Shown here: positions 15,347 through 49,900 of the stretch, in pieces
How the letters are laid out: every line of letters begins with the position of its first letter
Position numbering within the stretch: the stretch's first letter is position 1
Assembly: GCF_052425735.1 (NCBI RefSeq)
Contig: NC_135760.1
Coordinates: 8,246,001-8,310,000, forward strand
Length of the DNA: 64,000 nucleotides
Direction of reading: 5' to 3'
DNA from: Oculina patagonica
Lineage: Eukaryota
Program-made: the position numbers and the translations under genes
The notes under the pieces: model-generated
Database searches by the model: none
Seen by the model: the letters and a program-made list of their open reading frames with translations, nothing else
What the model was told of the DNA's origin: nothing

Positions 15347-18300
15347 TTAGCTGCAACTTCCACATCTCGCTAGTTTGTCTTCCATTCCTGGTTCTGAGGA
15401 TGAAAGGAGAGAAAAAGAAAAAAACTTGTGAATAGTGCTCGCTTCCATAATTAAACATCTTCAAATGCTTCCCTTCTTCACAGATATACTATCCATTTAT
15501 TTTAAAGAGGGTCTATGCGGAACCAGTTAAACCTGTCTTGCAGAACTCATTTTGCGTGTTATTTGTATTACACGAAGCAACGTTGGATAATAAGGTGTCT
15601 GTATTTCATTGGGCAGAATTAACGAATTAATTAATTTACCCATTTTTTCCCAAAGACATTAAAGGAGCTATGTAGCAGATTTTAATTGGTCTAAACTGTT
15701 CTGAAATTAGTGGTAGGCAACTAACCCATAAGAAAAATTATCTTTGAACATCTAAAGGAAGATATAATCTTGATTTGTGAATAGAAATCAACCTACGGCA
15801 ATAAATATCGATTTCTTGGTGACGCGCGAAAACGTTAGCCTAACTTTTTAAAGTTGCAATATTTACTCACCTTCTTTCCACAAGTTTAAGTCGATGGACG
15901 GAATATCATCACAGTGAACCACATTTAAAGTATCTTCAAACACATTCGGTTGAATTTCCTTCACGTTATCTGAATTGTCACAGATGAGTTTCGCCAGAGA
16001 GCTTCCCTGTCTGATCGAGTCTAGCTGCTCCAAGGTGAAGCCTGTGGTCGGGTCGTTTCGCTCGTACCAGAATCGATCACCCACGCGGTACCTCTGGAAC
16101 GTTCTGGCAATGATGCAGGTGAAGGTCTGTCCCAAGATAGACCCAGCTTGAGGATTCTCGCTAACACCTCCAACATAAAGGTCCACATCCGGAAGAAATG
16201 CGTCAATGTTATTGACATCTTGGACGTACGCCTTTTTGATCCTTGCCAGCTGGTTTAGGTCGATATCATTGAGATCTGCAAACGTGTTAGCAACGCCACC
16301 ACCACAGGCCGCTCGAAAATCTATGTAGGGTGGTAGGCCATGATCCCGACCACGCTGGATGTTAATTGCCAGGAGATCTCCCTGGGTACCATCACCAGGG
16401 CCTGGCATTATTAGGCTCTCGTGAATAGCTTCGGCAAAGTTCCTATACACACGAAAAGGCAATTTGTTAGTGATGTTTACTCAGTTGTGCTCACAGGAGC
16501 TCAACCAACGTCACCTTATCGGGAAGTTTAAGTTTACCCGAACGCAATCCATTTTAATCTTCTCTAATTTTGCCCATCCATGCCCCTTTTTGGCCTTACT
16601 GTGTTTTTTTTTATTTCTTCTACCGTTTTAAGCCATTATTGTGAAATTTCAGTTAATTCTATGAACAGCTGGTCAGTGCCGAAATTGCCTAAAATTGCGT
16701 GACATAGCCCCTTTAATGCTCCAGCATTCTTACCTGTCAAACAGCTGTGCTTGTTCTCTTACAAGCCCCAAATGTAGACCATCGATTCCATTGTTTTCAA
16801 GTTTGTACAAAGCAGATGGATCAAAGAACCTCGTAACACTAACTTCTCCAAGTCGTATAAAATCTTTGCTGAACTGTCCAAAACTTTCCCGAATCAGGGA
16901 GTGACCCATCCTGAAGGCGGCTGCAGCCAACGAGTTGAACGTCGTTGCGTCCCCGTTTGGATCGTAGCCGTTAAAAAATTGGCCTGCTGGCTCCAACAAA
17001 ATGCCGTTTTGTCGTCTCTGAAAAGCAGAAAAAGAAATAATCAATTTGCTGTCGTTTGTGTGCTTGTCGTTGCTGCTACTGTGTTTGTTAATACGAGCTC
17101 AATAATGAACTACGTCGCTTCTCGTTATATCTTACATCTATTTCCTTTAAAAAATACAAATTATAATATAACTACCACAGCCGCGCAATCAAATGCAGTA
17201 TACATAAGCGTGCACCATAATCCAATACTGCACGCTCTGGCGTGAGCAAAACGCTTAGAAAATTTTTCATCGGCAATGATATATAACAATCAGTCGGTGC
17301 GCGCTAAAACATGAATTAATTGTAATAAGGGGTTGATCAGGTAAAAAAAAAAACCAGCATTTTGGCTTAACATTTTGGTAAAAGGTAATTAGAAATTTGT
17401 TGTCTGTTTACAGACCCTCTATTTTCTCTAAGTTAGACAAGAACTTCAAACAAAATTAAAAGAACGCGTGAACGCAAGTGGGTGGGGATAAAATTTGGTT
17501 CTTACCAATTCTTCACTAAAGAACAATGTTGGCAGCCATTCGTTGTACGTAATGTGCTGAAGGTGCGCAATCACGATTTTTCGCGCTTCTTGGAAGATTC
17601 TTTCGTCGTGCCATGTTGGATTGAGATTATGAAGAAAATGTGCGATTCGGTTGTGCTCTCGCGTAATAAGGATGTGGAGGGTCATCAGCGCTGTTGACAA
17701 ATGAGAACGAGGTTCTTTAGAGATTATATCATTACCATTTAGACATTATTGATAATGTTTCGTAGTGCAAATTGACTGCGTGGAGTACAATTCAGAAAAA
17801 GAACAGGACGAATGATTTTAAATTATGAGCACAATTACTTTCTGAATTACACGAGGTCGAGGGCTTATTACCAATTATCATTCCGACATCAAATCTCAAG
17901 GTAACAAGTCTTTGAGAATCTTTATAAAGTGGGGGATATATTCTGTCAGTTTTGTAGCAACAAAAAGGAGTACATTTCAAAGAACAGCGGCTTACGGCCC
18001 CTTTTCTATCCGGAACGTTTAAACTGCCATTTCAAGGATCTAACCAAAACATCATAACAATGTTTAAAAATCTAACTAACTATATAAACTCGAAAACTCA
18101 AGGCTTAATAATTATTATTGTGCTTTTGCTTTTTACATTGAAACGATTGATTTTTAAAAGGCATAACTGTTTGATAATGCTAAAGCTATACCAGGATTAA
18201 AAGTTTTCAGTTAGCAAATTAAAGTACACATACTTGGGTTTTCATTGTCTCTAAAATCGGCAAAGAGAAAACAAGGTTTAACTGAAGGCCTTGGAGATCT

Positions 18301-29768: not shown

Positions 29769-32700
29769 ATGAAGAAAGAACTTGGTCACAACGTTTCTCG
29801 GACAATCACTGTCCACCACTTCTTCACGATTCTCAATTTTGTTATTCTGTTTATCTCGGTTGCTTGTCTGTCCGTCAATGTGTACATTCTACGCAGGGAA
29901 ATTGAGAGCGTGAAGGCCGACATTCGTCCCTTGGTGGTGAAGGAGAATGCGAAAAGTACTTCACAGTTGTATGACGATTATTTTGTCAAATCTCGGAAAG
30001 TTCGACAGATCGAACCAGGATCACACGAGATGGGGCCAGGACCGCATGAAATGCAGCCAGGAGCTGGCGGAGACAATGCCACTGAGTCTGCCGAGCCGAC
30101 TGAAGGCGAAATGACACCACATGAAGTTGATCCAGGGGCTGGCAGAGAAAATGCCACTGATTCTATTGAGCCGACGGAAGGCGAAATAACACCACATGGA
30201 GTTGATCCAGGGCATGGAGGAGAAAATGCCACTGAGTCTGCTGGGCCGACTGAAGGCGAAATGACACCGCATGGAGTTGATCCAGGGCATGAAGGAGGCG
30301 AAACAACAACTGAAGCTCCCCCGGAAGGGCATGGTGCGACAGCCGGTGCAACTAAGCTCAACTGCAGCAAGGTACACATATCCATTCACCCTGATATCGA
30401 CTTGAAACTGTTTTAAATAGCCTTTTCTTAAATTAAAATGCATCTTCGAAAGGTTTATTAATTTGAGAAATAGAATACTTTGTCAAAGTTTCTTTCAGTC
30501 CTAGTTTAAAACATTTATTCGAGAAGTCACTTTTCGGTTACAGATCCGTCTTGTAATGCAGATGTTTGTGTCGCAGATTAATGTTTGTGGAAAAGCTTTG
30601 CGATAAACCCGGGATGAACCAACTCAAAGTGCCTCTCAGCTGCGTCAGTCAGTCCCCTTTCCTTACCCCCTCGGCCCTTACAAAGGAGGGAGAGGATCAG
30701 TGACATGCTGAATGGTAGTTCATTGAAGTATCACGCTGGAGGAATAATAACCTCTTACGTACACAGAAGTTTTTTTTTTTGTTTTTGTTTTTTTTTTTTC
30801 ACGTCACGCAATCTTCTCTCCCCAACGCGTGGAGGAAAGATAGCGTGACAAGCCAAAGCTTAAAAGCTACGCTGGAGACTTAACAGTTGTTAAATTCTAC
30901 TCTTGATTCTCAAGTTCAACTGAATTATTTCTGTGAATGTTATCTTTTTTAGGATGCCCATGGTAACAATATTTGCACCGTAGGTAAGTAAACAGTCACT
31001 GGACGCGAATGTGGCTACTGGGCTGCAATATTTTACTTTTTAGTTTTAAAGGAGCTACGTCACGGGGATTTCGCAGATTTTTGGTCTTAGCTGCTCTGAA
31101 ATTAGTAGTAGGCAACTTCACGCATGAAAAACATTATCTTTGAACATCTAAAGGAAAATATAACCTCAGTTAATTTGCGGATATAAATCATGCTACGGCT
31201 ATAAATATCGAATTTTTTTTTAAGACGCGCGGAAACAACTTGAAAAGATCCGCTGCCAAAGAGGCTTGTTAACAGTTTCAGTGCTCTAAAATAGCAACTG
31301 TTAACAAGAATGCACCATTATTTTTAGGTTTTCTACGACACAAATATATGTTTTGGCTGTTCAAAAACTTGAAATCCTTGATAAAGCGCTGTTGATTATG
31401 CGTTATCATCATCAGCAGCTGCAGCTGCAGCAGCAGCTACATCGTCAGCTATTACATCACACGGCATAAAAATATCCAAAAAATAGGCCATTTCCGATAC
31501 CATTTGCCTCCATTTCAAAACGAGTCTACGTGCGAAACCATTCATATGAAAATGAGTTTGACCTTCAGCCCCATTTTCATGCAAATCAAACTCATTTTTG
31601 AATGGTTTCGCACGTAGACTCGTCTTGAAACAGGGGCAAAGGGTAACTCGGAAATGGCCTATTGTCGTTTAGTAATTATTATTTTTACTGTGTAGTTGGT
31701 GGAAGTCTTCTGGGAACTCCGGAAGCTCGTCAGGAGATAGAAGAAATGATTGAGTCTTACCTGGACAAAAAAGTTGGTGAGTGAGCTGTCATGTTGGTGA
31801 AGTACGTACTGGTTTAAAATGTTCAAAAACTGACTCTGCGTGCGAATACCTTTTCACATCATCATTGTATATTTTTACTTTTTATTCGTGTCTCTTAGGA
31901 ATTCTTTTTACATATATAGTCGTACCTAATTCATTCATTTTTGACTTGATAATGACATTTAAGCCTGGTTCTCATATTATCGTCCCGGTCGTCTCTGTCG
32001 CTTCAAAAAGTTTGCTTGCTCCAATCACCTCAGACTTTGCAAACGACAGAAGCGACAGAGACGATCGGGGCGATCATATGAGAACCAGCCTTAAGCGAAG
32101 GTCGAAACGTCGTTGCATTTAAAACTTTTAAATCAAGATGGTTTTAATCTTTTCGATTTTATCGCAATGTTTTTTCATTTAAAATCTATTTAGCTCAACT
32201 TTTCAATTGATGCTGTTTTATCCAAGCCATATAATGATTACCTCGACAGAACTCAAGTGGAAAACATTTCAGTCGCTTTGCTTTCCACCCTTGTTTGTGC
32301 AAGAGCTAAATTAAAATAACCATCATACGTCGCACAATCCAATTATTTCTCGTGCAATTATTACCATTGAATGCCTTATTTTTGTTTCCAGACCCTCCGG
32401 ATGGTGGGGTACCGAGCGGGGAAATGAATCAGACTATTCAGCAGTACCTGAAATCATTCGCGCAGGAATCTCTCGGTAAGCCATACAGTGCTGAAAATGT
32501 TCGTTGGTTTCTGTTTCATGCATGTGTCTTTAAGTGTTTGTTCATGGTTTTAGCGTGGAAGCCAACGAAATGGTCAAAGAAACAAAAAGTTAGAGCTCAA
32601 CAGAAGGACTTCGTTTCCACGACCCTCTGTATATTGAGGCAGTAAAGTAAATTTATTTAAGTAGATTTACAAGTGGGTTTTTTCTGTAACGTTCCAATTT

Positions 32701-35700
32701 CCACCAAGAATTGAGTCGTTCTACAGAGGCTCTTTTTTCATAATATTTAGGTTCCGACTTGCAGTGCCTACGCATGAGACGCGCATTTATTGTTTAACTT
32801 GTTTCAATTTGACACAACTGGAGCAAAAAAAATGCGACACATGACGACTTCTTTGTACGTGTGAAAGCAACCATTCGTGTAACTTGAGTCGCAGCAAAAA
32901 CGCGCGTCAAGTTCTACAGACAACTGCCAGGTGTAGCAGCGCTCTTACTCCTTGAAAAATAACTGTTATAACAGTTAAGCCGGCAGTAAAATATTATTGT
33001 CAGAATTAAAAAAAACGCATGCTAACAAGCTCCTTTCGAACATTTTATCAAATGCTTACATGTCAAACCGTGGACAGTTATAATTTTAAGAATAAGTAAA
33101 TATATTCTTGTTTTCAGGTCCCACTTTTGTACCCGGCGCCTCAGCCCCAGGAGAAAAGACACCTCTGGACACGTACGTGGATGATTCTGTTTCGCGTGCT
33201 TTAATAAAGTACTTTGAAGACAAAGGAGACCCCGGTAAGCCGAGAGCAACATTTTGTAGAACTTGTAGCCTATTCACTGGTATCAAATTGTCAACTTTGT
33301 TTTTTCGTTTTGATTGAAATGAATTAGGAAACGAGCTACCGCATAAGGTGAGTAAAGGTCCATCAATCCTGGGAAAGATCCCTGCTTTTCGTATATCTGT
33401 CTCTTTAACATGAGCGCGCGCTTCCTTTTCTTGTCTTTTCTTTTCTTCCTTTTAGTACAACTGCGAGCCAAATGGTTTTTCAGCAACGCAAAAACAAAAA
33501 AACATTTGCAAAAAAAGTGAAAGTTGACGCACATATTGTCATTTTCCTTCTGCATGTTGTCCTACTTTTAAAGGTTTTGCAGCACTATTACCGACGCGCA
33601 ATTTACTGCCGGAAATAAAATAAAAAAAGAAACTGATTTCAGTTATCCCTCTGACGTCCCACATGCCCTACCTGCGGTTGGAGTTTCATTGAAGCACGTG
33701 AATGCACATGAATAAAATGAGTGTTAGAAAGGTGAAAAAAAAACCGAACACATCATGAAAGAAAAATGACTGCATTCATTAATTTAATACATGGATAATA
33801 CATGGATTGCATGGAAAGCATCAATGTTGCTTGGATGGCATATGATTGCTTAGTTGCAAGAATTGCACCAATTACATGGTTTGCATGAAACGACACATGG
33901 TTAAATACACTGCATGATTTAGTTTTAGTTTAGGTATGCCAATGCATGAATAAAGGGCCATAAATTGCATGACTGCATGAGTTACTTGCATGATTTGCAT
34001 GAACAGCATGTGCATGAATTGCTTAGAAGGCATGCAATGCACGAATGATTAGTTGCACCGATGGAAGAGTTACATAAATTGCATGAATGCATGACTTGCA
34101 TAAATTGCAAGGTTTACATGAATATCGATGCATAGTTACATAAATTGCATGAATGCATGACTTGCATAAATTGCATGGTTTGTTTGAATATCGATGCATA
34201 GTTACATAAATTGCATGAATATATGACTTGCATAAACTGCATGGTTTGCATGAATATCGATGCATAGTTACATAAATTGCATGAATGCATGACTATCGTA
34301 AATCCCATGGTTTGCATGAATATCGTTGCATGGTAAATACATTGCCTGATGTACATATATAACGCAAAGTTACGTAAACTTGGCTTAGTCCTCAACGCTC
34401 GGCGGGCGCCAAAACTTGTGACTAGCTTATCCCTTGAACAACAGATCCTACAATCTTCGGTAAGTAGAATGGTACGACTTCAGTTTGTGATTATTTTTAA
34501 AGGAATTTTCGATATCCTACGCGGTACGACATCCTTTCACGTTTCAGTTATTTTTTTCATTTAAGGTGGACTCAATTTTTCCTCATCAAAACTGCCAGAT
34601 AATCACACTATCCAGAGTCTTGTAGAGGCTTATGTCGAGAACTATATCGGTGGGTATCCTACGGCATGCCACAGGACCAGACTCGTACCTAGTCGCTTCT
34701 CTTGCCTTTTGAGCGGCGCGCAAGGCATCAAGGGAAGGACGAACTTATTTACTTTTTCTATGTCCTTCCCATCAACCTCTTCGAACGTAGCGAAAACGAA
34801 AAAATGAGTAACGTCTGGGCACGAGTCTGCCACAGGACTGTGTTTCATGTTAACATTTGAACAGTACACAGTTTCGAAGATTTTGACATCCCTACGCCCG
34901 AATATCGTTTTTCTTTAGTTTTTTCCTTTCTTTATTTTAAGATGGACTCAACCTTTCCTCGTCACAGACGCAACAACAGCCGCCTGATAACCGCACCATC
35001 CAAAACTTTGTTCAGGCATATGTAGATAAGTATGTAGGTTGGTATACTGTGCATCCCACATTGTGTCCCTTTTTGTTATTGTTTGATCCAATTTATATCT
35101 TGTAGCATTTGACATTGTTTTACTTCACTAAATCCGTGTTCTTTTGTCATTCGAGATGAACGCAATTTTTCCTGGCCACAACTACCTGATAATGGGACTA
35201 TTGCGAGCTTTGTAAAGGATTACGTGGATACTTACGTGGGTGGGTGAGCTGTGGCATGACTCTGTTGTTTGTGTTAGTCTTTGAACAGGTTCATGTTCTT
35301 TCATATTTTAATATATATATTAAGAATTATTATTGAGAATACAGTTCTTTTACGTTGATGTCACGTCCGTTTTTTTTCATTCAAGGTGGACTCAATCTTT
35401 CCTCGTCACAACCGCTGTCACAGCTACCTTATAACAGCACTATCAGGAACTTTCTAAAGACATACGTTGATAACTTTATGGGTGGGTATACTATAGATAT
35501 CACACACGACTGTATTGTTTGCGTTTTTCTTCAAAATATTTCAATGTTTCTTTTGCTGGACTTCTAGCTGGACTCAATTTATCCTCGTCACAACCACACC
35601 CCTTTGATAACCGCACTATCCAAAACTTTATAAAGGATCATGTACATGATTACGTTGGTTAGTATACTGGAAAACGTCATTTCAATGTCTCGTTTGTGGC

Positions 35701-38700
35701 AATCATTGTGAAAGTTATTTTGTAAAAAGATTATGACATTGTTTTAAGAGAATTCTATTCATCTTTTATTTGCCCTTTAGGTGGACTTAATATTTCCTCA
35801 TCACAAACGCAGTCAAGACCACCCAATAACCGTACTATTCAGAACATTATAAAGGATTATGTGGACGAGTATGTAGGTGGGTATACTATGTCAGACCACA
35901 TAACTATGTCTTTTGTATTAATCACTGAAGTTTATAACATCCGTTTACATTGATACCACTCCTTTTTCATTCAAGATGGACTTAATCTTTCCTCATCACA
36001 ACCGCAATCACTGCCGCCAGGGAACCAAACTATCCAGAGCTTTCTGGAAGCGTACGTTGATAACTATATGGGTGGGTATACTGTGCGATACCAGACGACT
36101 GTGCCCCTTCTTTTAATCTTTAACAAGTGTTATAATTTCCAAGACTTCTTATGTCTTATTTCTTCTTTTCTTTTAGCTGGACGCAATTTGTCCTCATCAC
36201 AACAGACGCGTGAAAACCAGAGCATCCAAAAGTTTGTAAAGGATTATGTTGACGACTATGTTGGTGGGTAAAATGTGGCATTCCATATGTTCAATGTTCA
36301 AAGATCATTCATCTTAATTTTACGTTGATGTCAATCGCTATTTTTATTTAAGGTGGACTCAATCTTTCCTCGACACAAACGCAGCCACAACCGCCTGATA
36401 ACCGCACTATCCAGAACTTTGTAAAGGATTATGTGGAACAGTATGTTGGTGGGTGTACTGTGGCATGCCACCAAATGAATTGTCAGTGTTAATTCAAATA
36501 CGTTTATAATTTCAAAGATTACATATCTTTTCGGGTTGATGTCACTCCCTATATTTATTCAAGGTGGACTTAATCTTTCTTCGACACAGCCGCAACCACA
36601 GCCAACTGATAACCACACTATCCAAGACTTTGTTAAAGATTATGTTGATGATTATGTTGGTGGGTAAACTGTGGCATGCCATTCACTCTGTTGTTTGTTT
36701 TGATCATTAAATAAGATTATGAGTAACACATTGATGTTACTCACTATTTTTATTCAAGGTGGACTTAATCTTTCCTCGACACAACCTCCTGATAACCGCA
36801 CTATCCAGAACTTTGTGAAGTACTATGTTGACGAGTATGTTGGTGGGTAATTGGTGTAATGCTACCCAGTGAATTGTCTATAATTTTCAAAGATCATACA
36901 TCTTTTCACGTTGTTTTTTTAATATATTCAAGGTGGACTAAATCTTTCCTCGACACAGCCGCAACCACAGCTTTCAGACAACCGCACTATCCAAAGGTTT
37001 CTTGAAGCATACGTTGATAACTATATGGGTGGGTTTACTAACGACTTTATGTGTTGTTCATGATCAATAGGCCATTTCCGAGTCACCCTTTGCCTCTGTT
37101 TCAAAACGAGTCTACGTGCGAAACTATTCAAATGAAAATGAATTTGATTTGCATGAAAATGGACCTGTAGGTGAAACTCATTTTCATTTGAATAGTTTAT
37201 GCACGTAGACTCGTTTTGTGACCGAGGCAAAGGGTAACTCGGAAATGGCCTATTTTATCTTTTCTAAACTTACAACATAAGTCACATGCAAAGCAATTCA
37301 GTTTTGGGCATGCTGTCACTTAGCACGCGCTTTGATGTTTGTGTTATTCTTCAACCAGTTTGTATTGGAATTCTAAGATTTCTAATGCCGTCTCTTTCTT
37401 GTTTTAAGATGGACTCAATGTTTCCTCTTTACGACCTCAACTGCCTGATAACAGTACTGTCCAGAACTTTTTAGAGGCTTATGTCGATAACTATATAGGT
37501 GAGTATACCGTGGACAGCACACGACTGCGCTGTTTATTATTCTTGTGAAAATTATTTTGAGCTCTAAGGCTTCTAACGTCTTATTTTATCTTTTTAGCTG
37601 GACTCAATTTTTCCTCGTCACAATCACTTCCACCAAATAACCGCACTATCCAGAACTTTGTGAAGGATTATGTAGACGAATATGTTGGTTGGTACCCTGT
37701 GACATGACACGTCATTGCATTGTTTGTGTTAATCATAAAACAAGTTGACATTTTGTAAGATAACTTGATGAAATTCCGTTAATACCACAACTATTTGATT
37801 TGCATGGAAGGTGGACTCAATCTGTCCTCGCCGTCACAACCACAACCGTCTGATAACCGAACTATCCAGAACTTTGTAAAGGATTACGTTGACGAATATG
37901 TGGGTGGGTATACTGTGCCATTCCGTATAAAGCTAGGCTAAGCATTTTTGTATAAATCATCAAACAAGTTTATGATCTCTAAGGTTATAAAATCCTATAA
38001 CGTTTATACCACTCTTTTTTGTTCAAGGTGGACTCAACTTTTCCTTGTCACGGCTATCAGATAACCACACCATCGAGAACTTTGTTGAGGCCTACGTAGA
38101 TAAATACTTAGGTGGGTATACTATGGGACGCCACATAGTTTTGTTGTTTACATGTATGGTATTCTTCGAACAGTTATATTATTTCTAAGATTTTAAATCT
38201 CTTTCGCTTTTTAGTTGGACTCAATTTTTCCTCGTCACAAATGCAACAACGACAGCCTGATAACCAGACTATCCTAAACGTTGTAAAGGATTATGTTGAT
38301 GAATATGTCGGTTAGTATATTGCGGAACGCTATTGACTGTTTTGCTGATTATTGAACAAACTTATGACTTTTTTATTTGCATTTAAGGTGGACTTAATCT
38401 TTCTTCATCACAACCATTGCCTCAACCGCCCGATAACCACACCATTCAGAACTTTGTAAAGGATTATTTGGATGAGTATGTAGGTGGGTATACTGCGTCA
38501 CGTCATATGACTTAGCCTGTTCCAGGCTCTCGGTAGTTGAACGGGAGCGTTTTTCGCTCTCCCATGACTACCGAGTGCCTGGAACAGGCGACACATGACT
38601 ATGTTTTTTGAATTAATCATGACCTCATAATATCTTAAATAATAAAGTTCTTTTCACGTTGATACGACTCATATTAGTTTTTTTTTTTAGACGGACTAAA

Positions 38701-41700
38701 TCTTTCCTCGTCACAACCGCAACCACAGCTGCCTGATAACAGCACAGTCCTGAGCTTTCTTCAGGCTTATGTTGATAGCTATATGGGTAGGTATACTGGA
38801 TTTTTTGTGTATTCTTTGAAGAAAATTATAATTGCATGATATATATAATATATCATTTCTTTTCTTTTTTTAGCTGGGCTGAATTTGTCCTTGTTACAAC
38901 TGCAGCCACAACAGTCTGATAACCGCACTATACAGAACTTTGTAAAGGATTCTGTGGACAAATATGTGGGTGGGTATACTGTATCATGCCATACGACTTT
39001 GTGTTTTGTACAAATCATTGAACGAGTTTATTGTTTCTAAGATTATAATATCCATTCCCGTTCATACCATTACTTTTTTTATTTAAGGTGGCCTTAACTT
39101 TACCTCATCACAACCGCAAACAAAGTCGTCAGATAACCGCACTGTCCAGGACTTGGTTGAGGCCTACGTAGATAAATACTTGGGTGGGTATACTGTGGGA
39201 TGCAACATAGTTGTGTTGTATATGCAACTCTGCGAACAGTATTTATTTATTATTTGTTAGATTTTAAATGCCTCTTTCTCTCTTTTAGCTGGACGCAATT
39301 TTTCCCTGTCAAAATCACAGATAAGATCGCCTAATAACCGCACTATCCTGAACTTTGTAAAGGATTATGTTGATAAATATGTCAGTAAGTAAACTATAGA
39401 ACGCCATCTGACTGTATCGGTTTGCTTAAATCCTCGACAAAGTTTACATTTTGTAAGATTATGATATTCTTCTAAGTATATGGCATTTTTTTTTATTTGC
39501 ATAAAAGGTGCACTCATTTTTTCCTTGTCCAAGCTATAACCATAACCAAAACTTTGTAAAGGACTATGTTGATGAATATGTCGGTTAGAATATTGCGTCA
39601 TGCCATAACACAGTGTGTTTGTATTTAATCATTGAAAACATTCATAATTTCTTAGTTAATAACATCCCCTCACTCATATACCACTCCTTTGTTTATTCAA
39701 GGTGGACTCAATCTTTCCAGGCCACAACAACTGCAACCACAGCCGCCTGATAACCACACACTCCAGAGCTTTCTAGTGGCATATGTCGATAACTATATGG
39801 GTCGGTATACTGTATTCTTTGTGTTAATCATTGAATAATTTTATAGTTTCCACGATTTCTTTTGACTCATTTTCTTTCCTTTTTTTAGCTGGTCTCAATC
39901 TGTCCTCGTCACAATCGCAACTTCAACCGTATAATAACCTCACTATCGAGAAATATGTGAAGGCTTACGTTGACGAATATTCCGGTGGGTATACTGTGGT
40001 GTACCGCGTGATTGAGTTGTTAATATTTTAAACAATAGAGAATTCTTTTAAGTGGATGCCATAGTTTGTTTTGCATTGTAGATAGGATCAACATTTCCAC
40101 GTCACAGCCGCAATCACAACCGTCTGATAACCGCACTATCCAGAACTTTGTAAAGGATTATGTGGACGAGTATGTGGGTGGGTATACTGTGGCATTTGAT
40201 ATGGCTGTGCACAAATCATTGAACAAGTTTATAGTAACATATTTTTGAGATTATAAAATTACGTTGACGTTGATACAATTCCTTTTGTATTCAAGGTGGA
40301 CTCAACATTTCCTCGTCACAACCGCCTAATAACCGCACTATTCAGAACTTTGTAAAGGATTATGTTGATGACTATGTCAGTAAGTATATGATAGAACCCC
40401 ATGTGATTGTATTGTTTCTGTTAATCTTTGACTACACAGTTTACATTTTGTAGGATGATGAGATTCTTTTAAAGATATGCCGCTTATCTTTAATTTGCAT
40501 TGAAGGTGGACTCAATCTTTCCTCGACACAACCACAAGTACAACCTTCAGATAATCGCACTATCCAGAACTTTGTAAAGGATTATGTGGAAGAGTATGTA
40601 GGTCGGTATACCACGGATAGCTACGTATAAGTGTGTTTTTTGTGTTTTTACTATCAAAATACGTGAATATGCTAGTGTGTTTCAAGAATAAGGCATCCTT
40701 TAACGTGGATATTTCCGTATATTCCTTATTCAAGGTGAGCTCAATATTACCACGTCACAACCGCAACAACCCCCGCCTGATAACCGCACTATCTTAGATG
40801 TTGTAAAGGAATATATAGACCAGTATTTGGGTGGGTATGCTGTGACCATGTTGTTTGTGCCTCATGACTACGTAAACATTTTCTAGTAAGTTTATAACAT
40901 CTTTCACATAAGTGTCTTTCTCTTTTCTTTCACTTAAGGTGGACTAAATTTGTCCTCGTCACAACCGCTTGATAACCGCACTATCCATAGCATTGTAAAG
41001 GCTTATGTAGATACGTATGCAGGTGGGTAAGCTGTGGTATATTAGTGACTCTCTTGAGCAAGGTTATAGCTTTTAAGACTGTAAATTCATTTTAGTATAC
41101 TATGGCTTGCCAATGGCTGTATTGTTCCCGTTATTTTTGGGCAAGTTTACAGTTGTTTTTTTTTTTAATTTTAAACTCCATTCATATGGATATCCATTTT
41201 TTCTCGTTTACACGGTCTCAATATTTCCTTATCTAAAGGACAACCACTGCCGCCCGATAACCGCACTATCCAGAACTTTGTGAAGGATTATGTGGAAAAG
41301 TATGTAGGTGGGTATGCCATGGCGTGCAACTGGACATTGTTGTAAGTAATCTTTGAAGAGGCTTTCATTTTCTAAGATTATGACATCTTTATCTTGATGT
41401 CTCGATGTCTTGTTATCTTTCTTTTAAGATGGTCTCAATTTTACCTCGGTGCAACTGCAACCACAATCGCCAGCTGATAACCGCACTATCCGGCACTTTG
41501 TTAAGTCTTACGTAGAAGAGTATGTAGGTGGGTATGTTCTGACCTTGCTGTTGGTGTTAATTTGTGATGCAGTTTTTACTTTCACTGATTATTACGTAGT
41601 CTGAAATTCAGCCGTCCTCTCGTCCTCTCGCCCGCGCCCCTCCGTTGGGGGGTTGGGTCGAGAGGACGGCTGAATTTCAGACTAATTATTACGGCGCTTT

Positions 41701-44700
41701 CACTTGGGTTCGTCCTTGCTTTTTTTTCATTTAAAACGAACTCAACTATCTAATAATTGCACTATCTAGAGCCTTGTGAAGGTTTATGTAGACAAAAATA
41801 TCAATACGTAGACGGCAGAGGGTCGTATGTCTGTATTGGTTGTGTTAACCATGGAACAAGTTTATAGTTTCGACGATGTTTCACCAAGATTTGTTTTTTA
41901 TCCTGGATGCTTTTTCATCTAAGGTGGACTTAACCTCTCCTCATCACAAGCAGAGCTACAGCCGCCTGATAACCGCACTATCCAGAGCTTTGTTAAGGCC
42001 TACGTAAACGAACATATCGGTAAGTATGCCGTAGAGAGAAAGGAAGTAGCTTTATTAACCTGTATTGTTTGTGTTAACCTCTGAAAAAGCTTATATCTTC
42101 CGTGATAAGAGTCTTTTTACCTGAATGTCGTTTTTCTATTTTAGTTTATGTGGACTAAACGTTTCTTTATCACCCCCCCCCCCCCCCCAACCTCCTGACA
42201 ACCGCACTATCCAGAACTTCGTAAAGGATTATGTAGACAGCTATGTGGGTGGTTTTTTTTAGAAGTTAAAATTTCTTTGTTATTTGTCTCAGTCTTTGAA
42301 GTTTATATTTCGTTAGATTATAACATCCTTGCACTTTTAACCCACCTTTTTTAAACTTTTTTTTCGCTTTAGGTGGAATCAATCTTTCTTTGTCACAACC
42401 GCAGCCTGATAACCACATTCTCCAGAACTTTGTAAAGGATTCTGTAGATGAATATATCAGTGAGTACACTTTAAAAGTCCATTGGACTGTTATTGTTTGT
42501 TTTTATCGATGAACAACGTTATATTTTCCATAACAATGATAATCTTTCACCTGAACACTTTTTCCTGTCTTCATTTAAGGTGCACTCAACTTTTCTTCGC
42601 CGCAACCCCAAGCACCTAATAACCGCACTATCCAGAACTTTGTAAAGGATTATGTCGATGCGTATATAGGTTGGTATACTGTGTAACAGGGCCACATCGG
42701 CTATGCTGTTTGTGTGTATATTTTTTTAAGATTGCGATAACCTTTCACACTGGCTGTCTCTTTCCGTTTTTCATATTCAAGGTGGTCTTAATCTTTCCTC
42801 GTCACAACCGCCTGAAAATGGCACTATCCAGGACCTTGTTAAGGCTTATGTAGATGAATATATTGGTTAGTATACTGTTCCATACCAGTGACTGTTAACC
42901 TCTAGGCAAGCTCATTATTTCAACGATCGTCACATCTTTTCACGCGAATGTTTTTTTTTTTCAAGGAGGACTCAATTTTTCTTCCGCACTACTACAACCG
43001 CCCGATAACCGCACTATCCAGAACTTTGTCAAGGATTATGTAGACGAGTATGTGGGTGGGTATACTGTGGCATGCTACTTTACAATATTTTTTTTGTGAT
43101 CAACTTTGAACAATTTTCATTTCACTGTACGTCTATGTCACTTCTCTTTTTTTGTTTAAGGTGGTCTAAATTTCACCTCGTCGCAACAACGACCGCAACC
43201 ACCTGATAACCGAACTTCTATCCGGAATTTTGTCAAAGATTATGTAGATGAACAAATCGGTTAGTATAATCTGGAATGTAACGTGGCTGTGTGGTTTGTT
43301 TTGACTAGCTTTTGAGAAAAGATAAGTTGTTAAGATATTAAAGGGACTGTGTCACGGTTAAGTATATTTTGCCAGATACTCACTATGAAACGTAATGTTT
43401 GCAAAGAAAGTACTTCTATGGATCTAGATGACAAAATCATAGCTTCGACTGCGACCAAATGTGTCTCCCGGGCGTTATAATTTTTAAAAAGTTTTAAGCA
43501 AACAAGATATTAACTTTGAAAACTGTTCAGCCCAACAATATTTCAAAACCCGTATCGCAATCCATTTTAATCTTCGTCGCTTTTGGCCATCCATACCTCC
43601 TTTTGTATTTGCTGTGTTATTGAAATGTTCCTTCACTGTTTTAAGAAGTTATTATTATATTTCAACGAATTTGATGGTCATTTCCCATGCCTTAATTTAG
43701 CTAAAATCCGTGACACAGTCCCTTTAACATCTTTTTAACCTGATGTCACTTTTTTGTTCTTTATTTAAGGTGGACTCAATCTTTCTTTGTCGCAAGCGCA
43801 ACCACGGCCACCTGATAATCGCACTATTCAGAACTTTGTAAAGAATTACGTAGATAAGTATGTAGGTGGGTATATATACTTTAGCATACCTTAATACTGT
43901 GTTATTTGTGTCAATTTTTTACACGATAGTCAATGCTTTTTTTTTTCTTCTGCAATCTAGGTGAACAAAACCTTCCCTCGTCACAAACGCAACTACAGTC
44001 GCCTAATAACCGCACTATCCAGCACTTTGTTAAGGCATATGTAGATAAGTATATTGGTGGGTATATAAGGATCAGATGACTGTGCTGTTATTTGTAAATT
44101 GTTGATCTCATTTTTCATGAAATATTGTCTTTCCCTGCAGATGTAAAAGGTTACTCGTGCGTTGATACAAATGAGAGCAGTTTTAAATTTAGAGGCTGCA
44201 CGATACTGTGTTATTGGGCAACAGAAAGACTTCAAAACGCAAACAAGTCTTCTGTTAAAATGTCAGAGATGACCAATTCCAGGGGAAAAGGGGCAAATCA
44301 ATAGAGAAATATTTTGGAGTATAAGGTTTTTCATATGGGAAAAATACGCTTTAATGGGAGGACTTGCAGCTTTTGCATGTTAATTGACTTTATCTGGCTT
44401 CGTGAAAGAAACATGAATAAACTGCATGTATATGTTGCTGGTTAACCTGCATGCATGAATATGATGCATGTTTCATTGCATGTGTGCATGCTTTTGCATG
44501 TTATTTGCACGTTTTTTGACTTCATCTGGCTTTATGAAAGAAACATGAACAACTGCATGTGCATGTTGCTGATTTATTTGCATGTTGCATGATGAATATG
44601 ATGCATGTTTTATTGCATGTGTGCAAGTGTGCATGTCTTTGCATGTTATTTGCATGTTTTGTTGTCTAAATCTGGCTTTATGAAAGAAGCATGAATAACT

Positions 44701-46926
44701 AGTGCATGTTGCTGGTTAACTTGCATGCATGCTGCATGAAGAATATGATGATGCATGTTTCATTGCATGCGTGCATGCTTTTACATGTTGTTTCATGTTA
44801 ATTGACTTCATCTGGCCTTATGAAAGAAGCATGAATAAATGCATGTGCGTGTTGCTGGTTTACTTGCATGCTGCATGATGAATATGATGCATGTTTCATT
44901 GCAAGTGTGCATGTCTTTGCATGTTATTTGCATGTTTATTGACTTCATCTGGCTTTATGGAAGAAACATGAATAATTGCATGTGCATGTTTGCTGGTTAA
45001 CTTGCATGTTGCATGGTGAATATAATGCATGTTCCATTGCATGTGTGCATGCTTTTGCATGTTTTTTGTATGTAACCTTTCCTCAGATGGCAGCAATCTG
45101 AATGCAAAAATCAACGAGGTGGTTACCTCGCGCCTGAGAAAAACCAGTACAGGTTAGTTTATTCTTCTTTCAGCCGTCAAAATGATCAGCTACGAGAATT
45201 TCGAAGTTGTAGTCAGTCTCTGAAAAGAAATTGCGTTTTAAACTCGCTTGTTTGCTTGTTGGGAATAAACTTAACCCGTTTATGATATGTCCTAGCGCCT
45301 TTTGCATGCATGTCGCACACCTTAATGTTAAATGCATGTAGCTGTTACGTACTCTATTTTCGTTGACTTACACTGGATTTCCACTGACGCGTAATTCGTG
45401 CGTGAAACAATGACAATGTATGAACGACTTGCGCATAGTTAATAGAGGGAAGTGGTTAGGAAGCCTGGCAAAGTTCTTTGTTATATGTTTTTGTTCGCTA
45501 TTTTGGGGGTTGACCCTGCACAAAACCTGAGAAAATACAATAGGTGGTTACGTGTGTTCATGCAACTAACCAATTGAATCATAGCGATTACGTAATTCAT
45601 GCATAGTGCATGAGCGCAAAACAAAAGATGTGCAGGGTTGTGGACCTTCCAACATAAATCTTGGCCTCTTTGTTTGCTCCTTTGATGTTTGCCGGGCTTC
45701 CTAACCATTTTCCTATATTAACTATGACTTGCGTAAACGTTTACGTATGTCGTTCATACATTGATGACGGTCTCTAATTTTTTTTCACGTACGTAAACGC
45801 ACGTAAAAAATTAGGCGTCACTGGAAATTACAGTTGAAATCCACCTTTAGAGAAAAATGTATTATCTTTTTAAGACGGAATCCACTAGGAAGTCGAGTAA
45901 TATTTATTAAAGTTGGACAAAAATCAAGTACCAGAATAATTTAAATCCTATTGCGTTATTTCCTACCCTTAATAAAAGGTAAAGATGTAAGTAATTATCC
46001 GTGATAACACCAGCAACAATTTCTTATCAGAGTCTGAGAAAATGAATTTCAAAGTTCACAAGGTATGGGCAAAATCTCACGTGTAGCCATTTTGTAAATT
46101 CATTCAGTGGAATTCAGCGGAACTTCAAAATGTGTTTTCGATGTGTGGTGTTGTTAGAAAAGATTTCTTTTGATAAGATATTTGAAGCAGTAACAAAAAA
46201 GTTTGCAATAAGGTGGAAATAACTCTGGTACAACAGTTTCTTATCAGAGTCTGAGAAAATGATATTTAAATTTCACAAGCTATGGGCAAAAGCTCACATC
46301 TTTTAAGCGATTCAGTGGAATTCAGCGGAACTTCAAAATGTGTTTTCGATGTGTGGTGTTGTTAGAAAAGATTTCTTTCGATAAGATATTTGAAGTAGTA
46401 ACACAAAAGCTTGCAATCAGGTGTAAATAGTTTTGGTACATAATTTTGTCCAATAACTACTCGAAGTCCTGGCGGATTTCCTCTTAAAACCTGAAAACTT
46501 GACGGCGCGCTTCTCAACACTTCTATATCCTTCTTTACTCCAATTGCTGAAATTGGAAATTCACTGCGACAATCATTTATCACTCTCATATTAGCCTGCG
46601 AACAGGCTCCCGAGTGGGGTTTTACGCGAGCGAAGCGAGCGGAAGAGCGGGGCCTGAGGGGGAGCCTCCCGCGCCCCCCGTACTCCCCCTCAGGCCCCGC
46701 TCTTCCGCTCGCTTTGCTAACTCCACTCGCTTCGCTCGCGTAAAAACCCCACTCGGGAGCCTGTTCGCAGGCTATCTCATATACATCCGCAGTTCATATA
46801 TGAATCATTTCATATACATTACATCATTTCACTCCTCTCACGGGAAAATATGAACTCACAATTGACCTCGCTTCCAATGTGTGGCTTCAATTAATAGCTC
46901 AGTTGGTGGAGCATCGCACCGGTATC

Positions 46927-46960
<34 letters not shown>

Positions 46961-49900
46961 TGAATTTTTTTCAGGCTTCTTTATTCCAATTGCTTAAATT
47001 GGAAATTCACTGCGACGATCATTTATCACTCTCACTTCTATATCCCTTATTACATATGAACACCGAGTTGTATGACGTTGCTCACTCACCGCGAGTCTTC
47101 TACAGCGAAATGGTAAGAGCATCTGAATGCTACCCAGTGAGAAGGTCATCGTTTTTACTCCCATTGGGGAATTTAGTGGTGGTTGGAACATCCGATACGA
47201 TCGGCCGGTCGGGGACGATGAAGTCCCAAGGAGAAATTCGAAAAAATTAACGTATAGGAAAAATACACTGGGAAAGACTTTTAGAACGTCTGTGGAATCC
47301 CGTAAAAGCACTGTTATTCGTGTCATGTTTGCATACCATACAAAAAGCGGCATAAAACGGTGCATTACCAACTGTACAACATGATTGTTCAAGGCAGGAA
47401 GCTTGCCATGCCAAGCCAAGCTATCCTCTTTTTACTATAAAATCAGTCTGCCTGATCCTTCGTTTAACCAATTTATCCGTGTATCTGCCGCTATTTGTTT
47501 TTCACAGGTTTTCAACTTGTTTACTGTGTACGTATAACAATTTTTATCGTAATTAAATGACTGTACCTGAATATCAGCCTTGTCCCTAGGCGTTCTCACG
47601 TCCTATTGTCCGTGCGAAGTCTGGGATGGGAACGGGCGTGTCTCAGTGACGTCATGGCTCACAATCGGGTCCAAGTTTTACCGAGCCGAGAACTCTAAGG
47701 ACTAGGCTGCCTGAATATATGTCTATCAATTGTACAGATTTATGTTTTGTTTTTTTTCAACTTTGATAAGGGTGATTTCCCTTAAAGATTTTTTTCTTAC
47801 TTTGTATTTGTATTAAAATGAGTATTGTAGGCTTGAGATGGCATGATTTTCAGCTTTTGTCCTGACTCCTTAAGCGTTGCAAAAGGTTTTGGGTTGATTC
47901 AATCTATTTTGATGCAAGCACAGACGCCCCCAGAAAAAATCTTGATTTCTAAAATTCTCATTCTTAACAGATGTCAAGGCAATTCCTGGTCCTCCAGGTC
48001 CCCAGGGAATTCAGGGCGCTGCCGGTCCCCCTGGTATTCAAGGTCCTATCGGTCCTCCCGGTAATCCGGGGACTTCTGGTCCCGCAGGAGCAGCAGGATC
48101 ACCCGGCCCCGCAGGGGCTGCAGGTTCTCCGGGCGCTAATGGTATTCCGGGACCTCCCGGCCCACCGGGGACTCGGGGACAGCGCGGCTTACGTGGCCCG
48201 CCCGGCCCCCCTGGGAGGCCAGGGACGGCCACAACAGTGACTCGCCCAAAAGTAGAAGAACAAGAGAAAGATCCAAAGGAACCTGTGAAGAAAGCACCGT
48301 CGTTTGAAGGATTCTGTAAGTTTTTACACTTTTGTCAAAGCTACTTTTTCCTTTTTCCCATTTTTATTCTAAAGAATGAAATTGGCCAATCAAAGTGAAA
48401 AACTGTGCAGTAAGTGGCGGAGTTGTCAAGTTTCACGTCCGCTCTCCGACAATTGTCAAATTCACATCCTTCGCTACTTGCGTTTTGATTGGCCTATTTA
48501 AGAAGTTGTCAAAAATAATCAAAAAACTTTGTCGGTACAGTGCAAAGCACAGTAAGGGCCTGTTTACATGATTCCGGAATGACTTTCATTCCGGAACGAA
48601 ACTCGTTCCGGAATGAAGTTCGTTCTGCATTCACATGACAGAGTCGACCGGCTCAACCTAAAGCGTTTTCACGTACGCGGTTTTCGCGCGAGATCAAAAC
48701 AAGATGGCGCATGTTTCGCGCAAACATGTTTTTATGCTCATGAATGGCCGTATCTGCAAATTTAACGTGCAATTTCACCATAGAGCTGCTTCTTTGGGCT
48801 AAACAGCAAATGCTTTTAAGTTATTTCGCTCTGAATTCAAACTGTGGCCTCCGTATGCGATTTCATCTCGGAACGAAATTCGTTCTGTGTTTACATGATA
48901 CCAGAATGAAATGTCATTCCAGAACGAAAATTTCATTCCGGAATGAAAACCGGAATGAACTCATTTCGGGATGACTTGACTTTCGTCTCGGTATCATGTA
49001 AACAGATACAGAGAAATATGTGGGGATGGAATGAACTCGTTCCGGAATGAAAGTCATTCCGGAATCATGTAAACAGACCCTAAGGGTTGCTTACATTTAG
49101 TCTATAATGTGTTTTCGTCATTCAACGGCCTTGGATATATGTAAAAGGCCCGTTTACACAGGCGATTTTTGTCGCGCAACTCACTGCAATTTTTGTCGCG
49201 CCGAAGTTGCATAAAGTCTCCTGCGATGTCGCAGCGATGAAAATCGCCATGAAATCACCGCGAGTTTGCACGCGTGTAAACTAGCGGTGATATCGCAGGA
49301 GTTTCAAACCTGTTCGAAACTTCATGCAACTTCGGCGCAACAAAAATTGCATTGAGTTGCGCGACGAAAATTGCCTGTGTAAACGGGCCTTTTACATATC
49401 CAGGGCCTTTGAAATAAACGATAAAATTGATTCATTCAATTTTTTAATGCTTTCAGCTAAGCCCAACATTACCACCCCGCCTCCGAAATCGTACACAGCC
49501 ACGAAAGGAGACATGATAGTCCTACAATGCTCAGCTCATGGAACACCGAAACCTGAAATAATCTGGGCGAAAAAGAACAGCGGAAGAGCTGTCATAGGAA
49601 GTCACTTCGTCTTAGAAAATGCCCTCCCAGAGGACACTGGGAACTGGACGTGCAGGGCAAGTAACTTCATGGGTACGGACACCGCTGACGTTGAAATCGT
49701 CGTCGCAAGTAAGTGCTAAAATGCAAGGTATTAAAGGGACTATGTCACGGAGATTTCGCAGATTTTTGGTCTAAATTGTTCTGAAATTAGTGGAAGGCAA
49801 CTAAACCCATAAAAAACAATATCTTTAAACATCTAAAGGAAGTTATAATCTTAATTTGCGGAAGAAATCAAGCTAAGGCTACAAATATCGATTTTGTTTG

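What the first reader, a model, noticed from the sequence alone, without database searches (positions are those of the whole stretch)
33800..45062. Exon array bracketed by two unrelated minisatellites, both saturated with sense-strand UGCAUG (Rbfox element): candidate block-splicing switch
Seen: the intron before the array carries a 66-bp-unit repeat with about 21 TGCATG in about 530 bp. The intron after the last array exon carries a different ~140-bp-unit repeat with about 39 TGCATG in about 690 bp, ending about 25 nt before the next acceptor. The reverse complement CATGCA is rare (about 1 and 2), so the enrichment is on the transcribed strand. A hexamer is expected about once per several kb, and I saw no comparable cluster elsewhere in the window. 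Established: UGCAUG is the Rbfox/Fox-1 binding site, acts position-dependently (upstream represses, downstream enhances), and Rbfox self-associates. Inference: two independently amplified Rbfox platforms at the array borders control inclusion of the ~10-kb cassette as a block. Exon 33118-33234 and exon 45087-45152 are both phase 1, so skipping everything between them keeps frame. That would give a short (~900 aa) and a long (~2100 aa) protein in different cell types.
Basis: partly seen in the sequence, partly recalled or inferred. Interest (0 to 1): 0.92.

Follow-up and report, generated by a model that had tools for sequence, protein, structure and literature searches.

The report
Conserved UGCAUG clusters flank exon array
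In a stony-coral membrane-collagen gene, the two long introns on either side of a roughly 40-exon mini-exon array each carry a dense sense-strand cluster of TGCATG (the Rbfox splicing-factor motif). Other coral genera have clusters at the same two places, so these are probably real splicing control elements, but nothing shows that they remove the whole array as one block.

Summary
There are 21 TGCATG in 33808-34327 and 39 in 44374-45061, against 1 and 2 reverse complements. The other 62.5 kb of the window holds 19 forward and 18 reverse.

New evidence makes the clusters look functional.
- Clusters sit at the same intron positions in Pocillopora verrucosa and in two further corals, although the rest of the one intron compared in full does not align.
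- They are almost only on the sense strand, also where the sequence is not tandem.
- In every species, TGCATGA dominates the cluster before the array and TGCATGT the cluster after it.
- The downstream repeat has single-copy DNA depth, so it is not a dispersed satellite.
- Coral lineages whose gene has no array show no cluster.

The window's two minisatellites are lineage-specific tandem amplifications within or beside these older elements. The 137-bp unit copies a roughly 150-nt element that is about as conserved as the 66-nt exon 45087-45152 it abuts.

Whole-array skipping is not supported. Six P. verrucosa RefSeq isoforms (X1, X2, X4-X7) skip only 1, 7 or 8 exons inside the array, and the RNA contigs were inconclusive.

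Best reading: Rbfox-type intronic regulators of splice-site choice at the array borders. The regulated event is unknown. Two earlier notes of this scan described the same array, not the clusters.

The parts
29769..30413 (+). First coding exon: start codon, predicted transmembrane segment (type II orientation inferred) and a 75-bp coding tandem repeat
   Evidence: Open frame. tblastn of P. verrucosa P0148 residues 1-94 maps to 29769-30059. Tandem repeat at 30057-30287.
33118..33234 (+). 117-nt phase 1-1 exon (GPTFVPGAS...KYFEDKGDP), the last exon before the array
   Evidence: AG and GT borders read. 76% aa identity to P0148 residues 448-485. In Acropora-type corals this exon joins straight to the collagen exon.
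33808..34327 (+). Upstream UGCAUG cluster (R1): 21 sense TGCATG, 1 antisense, 17 of them TGCATGA. The 5' part is non-tandem; the 3' part (34068-34349) is a 66-bp unit x4.3
   Evidence: Orthologous clusters at L002 7861-8109 and L004 2939-3972. Partial alignment to the L004 unit.
34460..34466 (+). Conserved consensus 5' splice site GTAAGTA inside the upstream intron, about 105 nt before the first array exon
   Evidence: Read at about the same distance before the first array exon in window, L004 and P. verrucosa L002. The putative upstream mini-exon would be 15, 7 or 13 nt, so it is not frame-conserved. Its role is unknown.
34566..44056 (+). Array of about 40 phase 1-1 mini-exons (69-99 nt) encoding [33 protein letters not shown]. 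Introns are mostly 77-146 nt; a few are longer, up to about 700 nt
   Evidence: 37 exons with AG/GT borders and open frame, more by eye. Alignment A1. RNA joint 43862>43958.
43961..44056 (+). Last array exon
   Evidence: An RNA contig of run X13 (depth 34) appears to end at its donor, inferred from the from_end values.
44372..45073 (+). Downstream UGCAUG cluster (R2): 137-bp unit x5.1, 39 sense TGCATG, 2 antisense, 26 of them TGCATGT. Ends 25 nt before the next acceptor
   Evidence: Single-copy DNA depth. Orthologous clusters at L002 17004-17699 and L011 748-1471. The last unit aligns with both (A3).
45087..45152 (+). 66-nt phase 1-1 exon ([22 protein letters not shown]) between the array and the collagen exon. 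Candidate regulated exon
   Evidence: Borders. Orthologous exons at L002 17734-17796 and L011 1502-1567. Missing from the array-less Acropora-type proteins.
45303..45338 (+). Three more sense TGCATG, 151-186 nt downstream of the 66-nt exon
   Evidence: One lies in a block shared with L011 (TTAAATGCATGTAGCTGTTAC). L011 has copies at +164 and +183; P. verrucosa has copies at +38 and +257.
47970..48320 (+). Collagen triple-helix exon, followed downstream by three Ig exons, a Sushi exon and a D8C exon (to about 55646)
   Evidence: Pfam hits. tblastn to orthologs. RNA contig X13 record 7 starts at 47970.

Best explanation
R1 and R2 are two old, orthologously conserved intronic splicing-regulatory elements built from sense-strand (U)GCAUG. 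They lie in the two long introns (1.3 and 1.0 kb) that bracket the mini-exon array of a coral transmembrane collagen/Ig/Sushi/D8C protein.

In this species each element was enlarged by local tandem duplication: 66 bp x4.3 upstream and 137 bp x5.1 downstream.

The most likely reader is the coral Rbfox ortholog, which would set splice-site choice at the array borders in a cell-type-dependent way. The event best placed to be controlled is use of the 3' splice site of the 66-nt exon 45087-45152, which R2 abuts. R1 would act on pairing of the 33234 donor with the first array exon.

Shown: motif density, strand bias, positional and partial sequence conservation, single-copy status of R2, and absence where the array is absent.

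Inferred: that the elements act at the RNA level, that Rbfox is the binder, and which splice event changes.
For: 1. Density and strand: 21:1 and 39:2 sense to antisense, against 19:18 in the rest of the window.

2. Orthologous conservation. P. verrucosa locus L002 has 7 TGCATG at 7861-8109, between the orthologous 117-nt exon and the array. It has 15 at 17004-17699, ending 30 nt before the orthologous 66-nt exon, and only 2 (positions 669 and 25595) far from these introns in 27.6 kb. Coral L004, L005 and L006 have 27, 22 and at least 18 in the upstream intron. Coral L011 has 26 sense and 0 antisense in the downstream intron, ending 25 nt before the exon.

3. The upstream intron of window and P. 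verrucosa does not otherwise align. The roughly 150 nt before the 66-nt exon align in three species about as well as the exon, with shared TGCATG columns.

4. Sense-only orientation holds in non-tandem sequence: L011 26:0, P. verrucosa 7:1 and 15:1, window 33800-34067 9:1.

5. The motif flavour is conserved. The upstream cluster is TGCATGA and never TGCATGT in three species; the downstream cluster is mainly TGCATGT in three species.

6. R2 is single-copy in DNA.

7. Array-less lineages lack clusters. In L008 the exon is followed by the collagen exon about 560 nt later, with 2 TGCATG. A. digitifera L003 has none in the readable part.

8. Different units were amplified in different lineages (66 bp here, 85 bp in L004), and copy number differs among L004, L005 and L006. 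The motif content stays high throughout.

9. Rbfox binds GCAUG, and Rbfox/LASR complexes multimerise (PMC11874969).
Against: - No tool here could show that corals encode an Rbfox protein with the same specificity, or that it binds these sites.
- No alternative splicing was seen at either array border. The six P. verrucosa isoforms recovered all include the first array exon, the end of the array and the 66-nt exon.
- The RNA contigs gave only one clean junction, inside the array.
- There are effectively two independent old elements, so 'both on the sense strand' is weak statistics on its own.
- Tandem duplication keeps orientation automatically.
- R2 conservation could partly reflect ordinary 3' splice-site and branch-point constraint.
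Confidence: 0.55

Rival explanations
1. Block-splicing switch. Rbfox assemblies on R1 and R2 bridge the two introns and loop out all of the roughly 40 array exons. The 33234 donor then joins 45087, or 47970, giving a short protein in Rbfox-expressing cells.
For: - The clusters sit exactly at the two array borders in every array-bearing species seen.
- All exons involved are phase 1-1, so the product stays in frame.
- An array-less architecture is viable, since it is the only form in Acropora-type corals.
- Blocks of 7 or 8 array exons are skipped in P. verrucosa isoforms X6 and X7.
- Rbfox/LASR multimerises and could bridge intron segments (PMC11874969).
- The X13 mRNA contig appears to end at the 44056 donor, which could mark a branch in the assembly graph (inferred).
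Against: - None of the six recovered P. verrucosa isoforms skips the whole array.
- No such junction appeared in the shown part.
- Upstream-proximal Rbfox sites normally repress the adjacent acceptor, which argues against a 33234>45087 joint.
- Phase compatibility is trivial here.
- The deepest conservation is tied to the 66-nt exon, not to the array.
Confidence: 0.12
2. Neutral repeats. The introns happen to hold slippage-prone TGCATG-rich low-complexity DNA that expands and contracts without function. Conservation would reflect shared descent and repeated re-amplification.
For: - Both window clusters are partly minisatellites.
- Copy number is polymorphic in L004, L005 and L006.
- This genome has many minisatellites by earlier notes of the scan.
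- No regulated splicing event has been shown.
Against: - The motif stays intact while spacers and unit lengths change (66, 85 and 137 bp, or no tandem structure at all in P. verrucosa and L011).
- The surrounding upstream intron is unalignable.
- There is no antisense drift.
- Position relative to the acceptor is fixed at 25, 25 and 30 nt.
- Clusters are absent in array-less lineages.
Confidence: 0.13
3. DNA-level element. The clusters are intronic enhancers or other protein-binding DNA, for example for a factor that recognises TGCATG or the overlapping TTGCAT. They would not be RNA elements.
For: - Dense homotypic motif clusters are typical of enhancers.
- TTGCAT is also enriched.
- Nothing here measures RNA binding.
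Against: - The full POU octamer ATTTGCAT is rare in the clusters (0-5 copies).
- DNA sites usually work in both orientations, yet orientation is sense-only in non-tandem clusters in several species.
- R2 keeps a fixed distance of 25-30 nt from a 3' splice site.
Confidence: 0.1
4. RNA-RNA bridging without a protein. The palindromic sub-motifs UGCA, CAUG and AUGCAU let R1 and R2 pair with each other (or each with itself), folding the array out or masking the 45087 acceptor.
For: duplexfold of R1 against R2 gives -275 kcal/mol, against -209 +/- 9.5 for mononucleotide shuffles of R2 and -180 +/- 13 for other window segments. AUGCAU occurs 7 and 8 times.
Against: - The helices would be only 4-6 bp each.
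- The calculation ignores competing intramolecular folding, and its shuffles destroy the palindromes by construction.
- There is no long complementary arm, and blastn finds no inverted match.
Confidence: 0.04

Closest known systems
Repeated (U)GCAUG intronic splicing elements bound by Rbfox/Fox-1 next to vertebrate alternative exons (for example fibronectin EIIIB, calcitonin/CGRP, CAMKK2 exon 16, MARK3)
   Same: The same hexamer on the transcribed strand, in introns within a few hundred nt of small frame-preserving exons, in several copies and conserved between species. A cluster close to a 3' splice site matches the known repressive arrangement (own knowledge for the named classic cases; GCAUG binding and multi-site modules from PMC11874969).
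   Different: There are 20-40 copies instead of about 2-6, enlarged by minisatellite amplification. The host is a cnidarian. The clusters are paired on both sides of a 9.5-kb array of about 40 mini-exons. No regulated event or binding has been shown.
RBM20 control of the titin I-band exon block (UCUU clusters in flanking introns)
   Same: A long run of small, frame-symmetric, repeat-encoding exons that can be left out in blocks. RNA-binding-protein motif clusters lie in neighbouring introns (UCUU motif: bioRxiv 10.1101/823351; the block-repression picture is own knowledge).
   Different: A different motif and factor. In titin the sites are spread through the repressed region, whereas here the array introns themselves carry almost no GCATG (9 sense and 9 antisense in 9.5 kb). 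Whole-block skipping is not shown here.
Dscam-type exon arrays with docking and selector RNA pairing
   Same: A tandem array of similar exons with special intronic sequences at the array border.
   Different: Dscam exons are mutually exclusive and are chosen by long complementary RNA pairs. Here many array exons are included together: 16-24 repeats per P. verrucosa protein, and consecutive exons are joined in RNA. No selector or docking complementarity was found.

Membership tests
Rbfox-dependent intronic splicing element | (U)GCAUG on the transcribed strand in an intron near an exon | tested here: met
   21 and 39 sense copies against 1 and 2 antisense. R2 ends 25 nt before exon 45087; R1 lies 317-1093 nt after the 33234 donor.
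Rbfox-dependent intronic splicing element | Motif conserved at the orthologous position in other species | tested here: met
   P. verrucosa at both introns. L004-L006 at the upstream intron. L011 at the downstream intron. Shared TGCATG alignment columns.
Rbfox-dependent intronic splicing element | The neighbouring exon is alternatively spliced | tested here: inconclusive
   P. verrucosa isoforms vary only inside the array. RNA contigs gave one constitutive-looking joint and truncated tables.
Rbfox-dependent intronic splicing element | The organism has an Rbfox protein that binds the site, and splicing changes with it | not testable with these tools
   No eukaryotic genome search, CLIP or perturbation data were available. 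Literature searches gave nothing for cnidarians.
Block exon skipping (titin/RBM20-like) | Transcripts that lack the whole exon block | tested here: not met
   None among six P. verrucosa RefSeq isoforms; the largest skip is 8 exons. No whole-array-skipping joint appeared in the part that was shown (tables truncated). Bulk data can miss rare cell types.
Block exon skipping (titin/RBM20-like) | Regulator motifs concentrated at or in the block | tested here: met
   GCATG density is 18 and 40 per kb in the two flanking introns, against 0.95 per kb inside the array and 0.5-0.7 elsewhere.
Dispersed satellite or transposon-derived repeat | Many copies elsewhere in the genome | tested here: not met
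   R2 DNA word depth is 41-64, close to the 35-48 of single-copy flanks; nearby repeats reach 1e3-4e5. No other copy of either unit in the 64-kb window. R1 depth was not measured.

The most novel reading that the evidence does not exclude
The two conserved UGCAUG platforms are bridged by multimerising Rbfox complexes. In a minority cell type the whole 9.5-kb, roughly 40-exon array, with or without the 66-nt exon, is then looped out as a unit. This would recreate by splicing the array-less architecture that Acropora-type corals have in their genomes. Minisatellite copy number would tune the switch.
Probability: 0.12. Interest if true: 0.85.

Novelty: new variant of a known kind. Interest (0 to 1): 0.6.

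Why it matters
If these clusters are Rbfox elements, they would be among the densest natural UGCAUG platforms described, and they sit in a cnidarian. That would push a working Rbfox splicing code back to the cnidarian-bilaterian ancestor.

The locus also offers a natural series for studying how motif number shapes splicing of a length-variable extracellular stalk: 7 to 39 copies, tandem or not, and polymorphic within populations. It makes a concrete question testable with simple RT-PCR: how does a run of about 40 near-identical mini-exons get joined correctly to its unique neighbours?

If the clusters turn out to be inert, the case is still a clean example of motif-preserving minisatellite turnover.

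Tried and rejected
- Direct junction evidence. The single read-laying run (42400-48399; three RNA runs and one DNA run) was swamped by two high-copy repeats at 43.2-43.8 kb and 45.4-47.2 kb. 231 joints and 1399 loose ends were not shown, so 44056>45087, exon-45087 skipping and whole-array skipping could not be read.\n- A search for spliced transcripts through the peptide of exon 33118-33234 returned only genomic read-through ORFs, because the length filter excludes long mRNA ORFs.\n- A. millepora and A. palmata loci were not on record. The A. digitifera locus has an N gap exactly in the relevant interval, and it was left unfilled.\n- P0164's contig had no DNA. The equivalent pieces would be 15, 7 and 13 nt in three species, and the piece is absent from the P. 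verrucosa proteins.\n- Literature searches for Rbfox in cnidarians or for UGCAUG tandem repeats found nothing relevant.\n- Pfam finds no family for the 32-aa repeat.
Full report
**1. Observation**

The window has 79 TGCATG and 21 CATGCA in total. Sixty of the TGCATG lie in two places: 33808-34327 (21 copies, with 1 CATGCA) and 44374-45061 (39 copies, with 2 CATGCA). The remaining 62.5 kb holds 19 forward and 18 reverse copies.

TGCATG is the commonest hexamer in both regions, about 127-fold and 179-fold above the window background. Dinucleotide-preserving shuffles of each region give means of 3.7 and 8.0 copies, with maxima of 9 and 17.

Tandem Repeats Finder reports a 66-bp unit x4.3 at 34068-34349 and a 137-bp unit x5.1 at 44372-45073. 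The first half of the upstream cluster (33808-34067) is not tandem and still has 9 sense against 1 antisense copies. Neither repeat matches the other, or any other part of the window, by blastn. The last downstream copy ends 25 nt before the acceptor of exon 45087-45152.

**2. The gene**

On the + strand the gene has, in order:
- a first exon with a transmembrane segment (about 29769-30413);
- a few small exons, the last of them exon 33118-33234;
- about 40 mini-exons of 69-99 nt between 34566 and 44056, each phase 1 to phase 1 with AG and GT borders, encoding [33 protein letters not shown];
- a 66-nt exon at 45087-45152;
- a collagen exon, three Ig exons, a Sushi exon and a D8C exon (Pfam).

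A profile of the repeat searched against 1.84 billion proteins found one full-length protein, an uncharacterised protein of Pocillopora verrucosa. The other hits were short read-through ORFs from coral contigs. The window therefore comes from a stony coral. Its exons are 55-89% identical in protein to P. verrucosa, which I read as a distant relative, not the same genus.

**3. Orthologous loci**

*P. verrucosa (L002).* This locus has 26 TGCATG in 27.6 kb.
- Seven lie at 7861-8109, in the intron between the ortholog of exon 33118-33234 and the array.
- Fifteen lie at 17004-17699, ending 30 nt before the ortholog of the 66-nt exon (17734-17796).
- Two more follow that exon.
- Only two (positions 669 and 25595) lie far from these introns.

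These clusters are hardly tandem: only a 22-bp unit x3.5 is reported. The upstream intron as a whole does not align with the window's.

*A further coral (metagenome contigs L004-L006).* Its upstream intron holds an 85-bp minisatellite carrying 27, 22 and at least 18 TGCATG in three samples, so copy number is polymorphic. Its unit corresponds to the non-tandem piece 33940-34060 of the window, not to the window's 66-bp unit.

*Another coral (L011).* It has the last two array exons, then 26 sense and 0 antisense TGCATG in mostly unique sequence. The cluster ends 25 nt before its 66-nt exon, and two more copies lie 164 and 183 nt after the exon.

*Alignment before the 66-nt exon.* The roughly 150 nt before this exon align among window, L011 and P. 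verrucosa about as well as the exon itself, with TGCATG in shared columns. The window's 137-bp unit is a five-fold tandem copy of this element.

*Motif flavour.* The flavour is kept in all species. The upstream clusters are TGCATGA and never TGCATGT; the downstream clusters are mainly TGCATGT.

*Array-less corals.* Acropora proteins, and an mRNA contig from another coral, join the KYFEDKGDP exon directly to the collagen exon. In contig L008 the two exons are about 560 nt apart with only 2 TGCATG between them. The A. digitifera locus shows no cluster in its readable part, but it has an assembly gap there, which I left as it is.

**4. Is it a dispersed repeat?**

In a DNA run under the same organism label as the window (it holds 92% of the sampled words), word depth over the downstream repeat is 41-64. 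Neighbouring unique sequence has 35-48. Two real high-copy repeats nearby (43.2-43.8 kb and 45.4-47.2 kb) reach 1e3 to 4e5. R2 is therefore single-copy. R1 was not measured, but its conserved position argues the same.

**5. RNA evidence**

Three runs labelled as probable RNA, from three organism labels, contain a contig that joins 43862 to 43958 (GT..AG). That is array exon 43770-43865 joined to the last array exon. The joint is absent from the DNA run.

The runs also hold unspliced intron sequence. One of them (X2) covers R2 at 29-55, near its exon depth, but multi-mapping of the repeat units inflates that figure. Junctions at 44056, 45087 and 47970 were not among the rows shown, so border splicing remains unknown.

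Six P. verrucosa RefSeq isoforms were recovered (X1, X2, X4-X7). They differ by a 7-residue segment, one short exon, one full exon, seven exons or eight exons, all inside the array. None lacks the whole array or the 66-nt exon.

**6. Interpretation**

Several features point to selection on the RNA motif:
- motif density;
- sense-only orientation in non-tandem sequence;
- a fixed distance to a 3' splice site;
- conservation through unit turnover;
- presence only where the array exists.

(U)GCAUG is the Rbfox site, and Rbfox/LASR complexes multimerise and may bridge intron segments (PMC11874969). The position rule (upstream represses, downstream activates) is established knowledge that I did not re-check here.

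By that rule, R2 should repress the 45087 acceptor or help the last array exon. R1 should help the 33234 donor or hinder the first array exon. This fits regulation at the array borders better than a 33234>45087 joint.

The block switch is not excluded, because bulk RNA data and gene models miss rare cell types. It has no direct support.

Rival readings were considered and rank lower:
- neutral minisatellite;
- DNA enhancer (the POU octamer is rare);
- RNA-RNA pairing through the palindromic sub-motifs (duplexfold -275 against -209 +/- 9.5 for shuffles, a weak and biased test).

**7. Novelty and limits**

Multi-copy UGCAUG intronic elements are a known kind. Three things are new here: the scale (20-40 copies through minisatellite amplification), the cnidarian host, and the paired placement around a mini-exon array conserved across coral genera.

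Not shown: presence of Rbfox in this coral, binding, and any regulated splice event. The earlier notes of this scan (s1-306340, s1-306475) describe the array and its glycosylation sequons, not the clusters. My exon list and alignment A1 agree with both (invariant N4 and N17).

Noticed in passing
window 34445-34466; L004 about 4075-4100; L002 about 8440-8462: A consensus donor (CAG or TCG followed by GTAAGTA) is conserved about 105-125 nt before the first array exon in three corals, just after the upstream cluster. The possible mini-exon before it would be 15, 7 or 13 nt, so it is not a frame-keeping coding exon. It could be a decoy, recursive or alternative-first-exon donor.
   Followed up: partly
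window 43200-43800 and 45400-47200: Two high-copy repeats (DNA word depth 1e3 to 4e5) lie inside introns of the gene. The second contains a 208-bp tandem duplication at 46014-46440. Contig record 5 of RNA run X13 goes from 45869 to 47033, so some individuals seem to lack about 1.16 kb there (a polymorphic insertion).
   Followed up: partly
P0149, P0153 (Acropora orthologs): Acropora has no 32-aa array. Instead it amplified the exon pair [18 protein letters not shown] + SMFVPGAP...KYLEGKEDP about four times. The same gene therefore grows different exon arrays in different coral lineages.
   Followed up: partly
window 30057-30287: A 75-bp coding tandem repeat (x3.1) in the first exon encodes an acidic [25 protein letters not shown] unit with an N-glycosylation sequon.
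   Followed up: no
window 44400-45000 in RNA run X2: The R2 intron is covered at depth 29-55, close to exon depth and 2-4 times other introns of that run. This could mean slow removal or retention of this intron, or only multi-mapping of the repeat units.
   Followed up: no
window 44016-44057 in RNA run X13: The spliced contig of depth 34, which covers at least the last two array exons, appears to stop at the 44056 donor (from_end 41 at position 44016). Unspliced sequence did not break it at the shown joint 43862>43958. This may mark a real branch, that is, alternative continuation.
   Followed up: no
L004 against L005 against L006: The 85-bp TGCATG minisatellite differs by two units (170 bp) between contigs from different samples of the same study. 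It is a length polymorphism of a putative regulatory element.
   Followed up: partly
window array introns, e.g. 37796-37810, 38373-38387, 40067-40081, 40491-40505: Several array acceptors are preceded by TTTGCAT(T/G), a near-copy of the cluster motif inside the pyrimidine tract. Only three full TGCATG occur in the whole 9.5-kb array.
   Followed up: no
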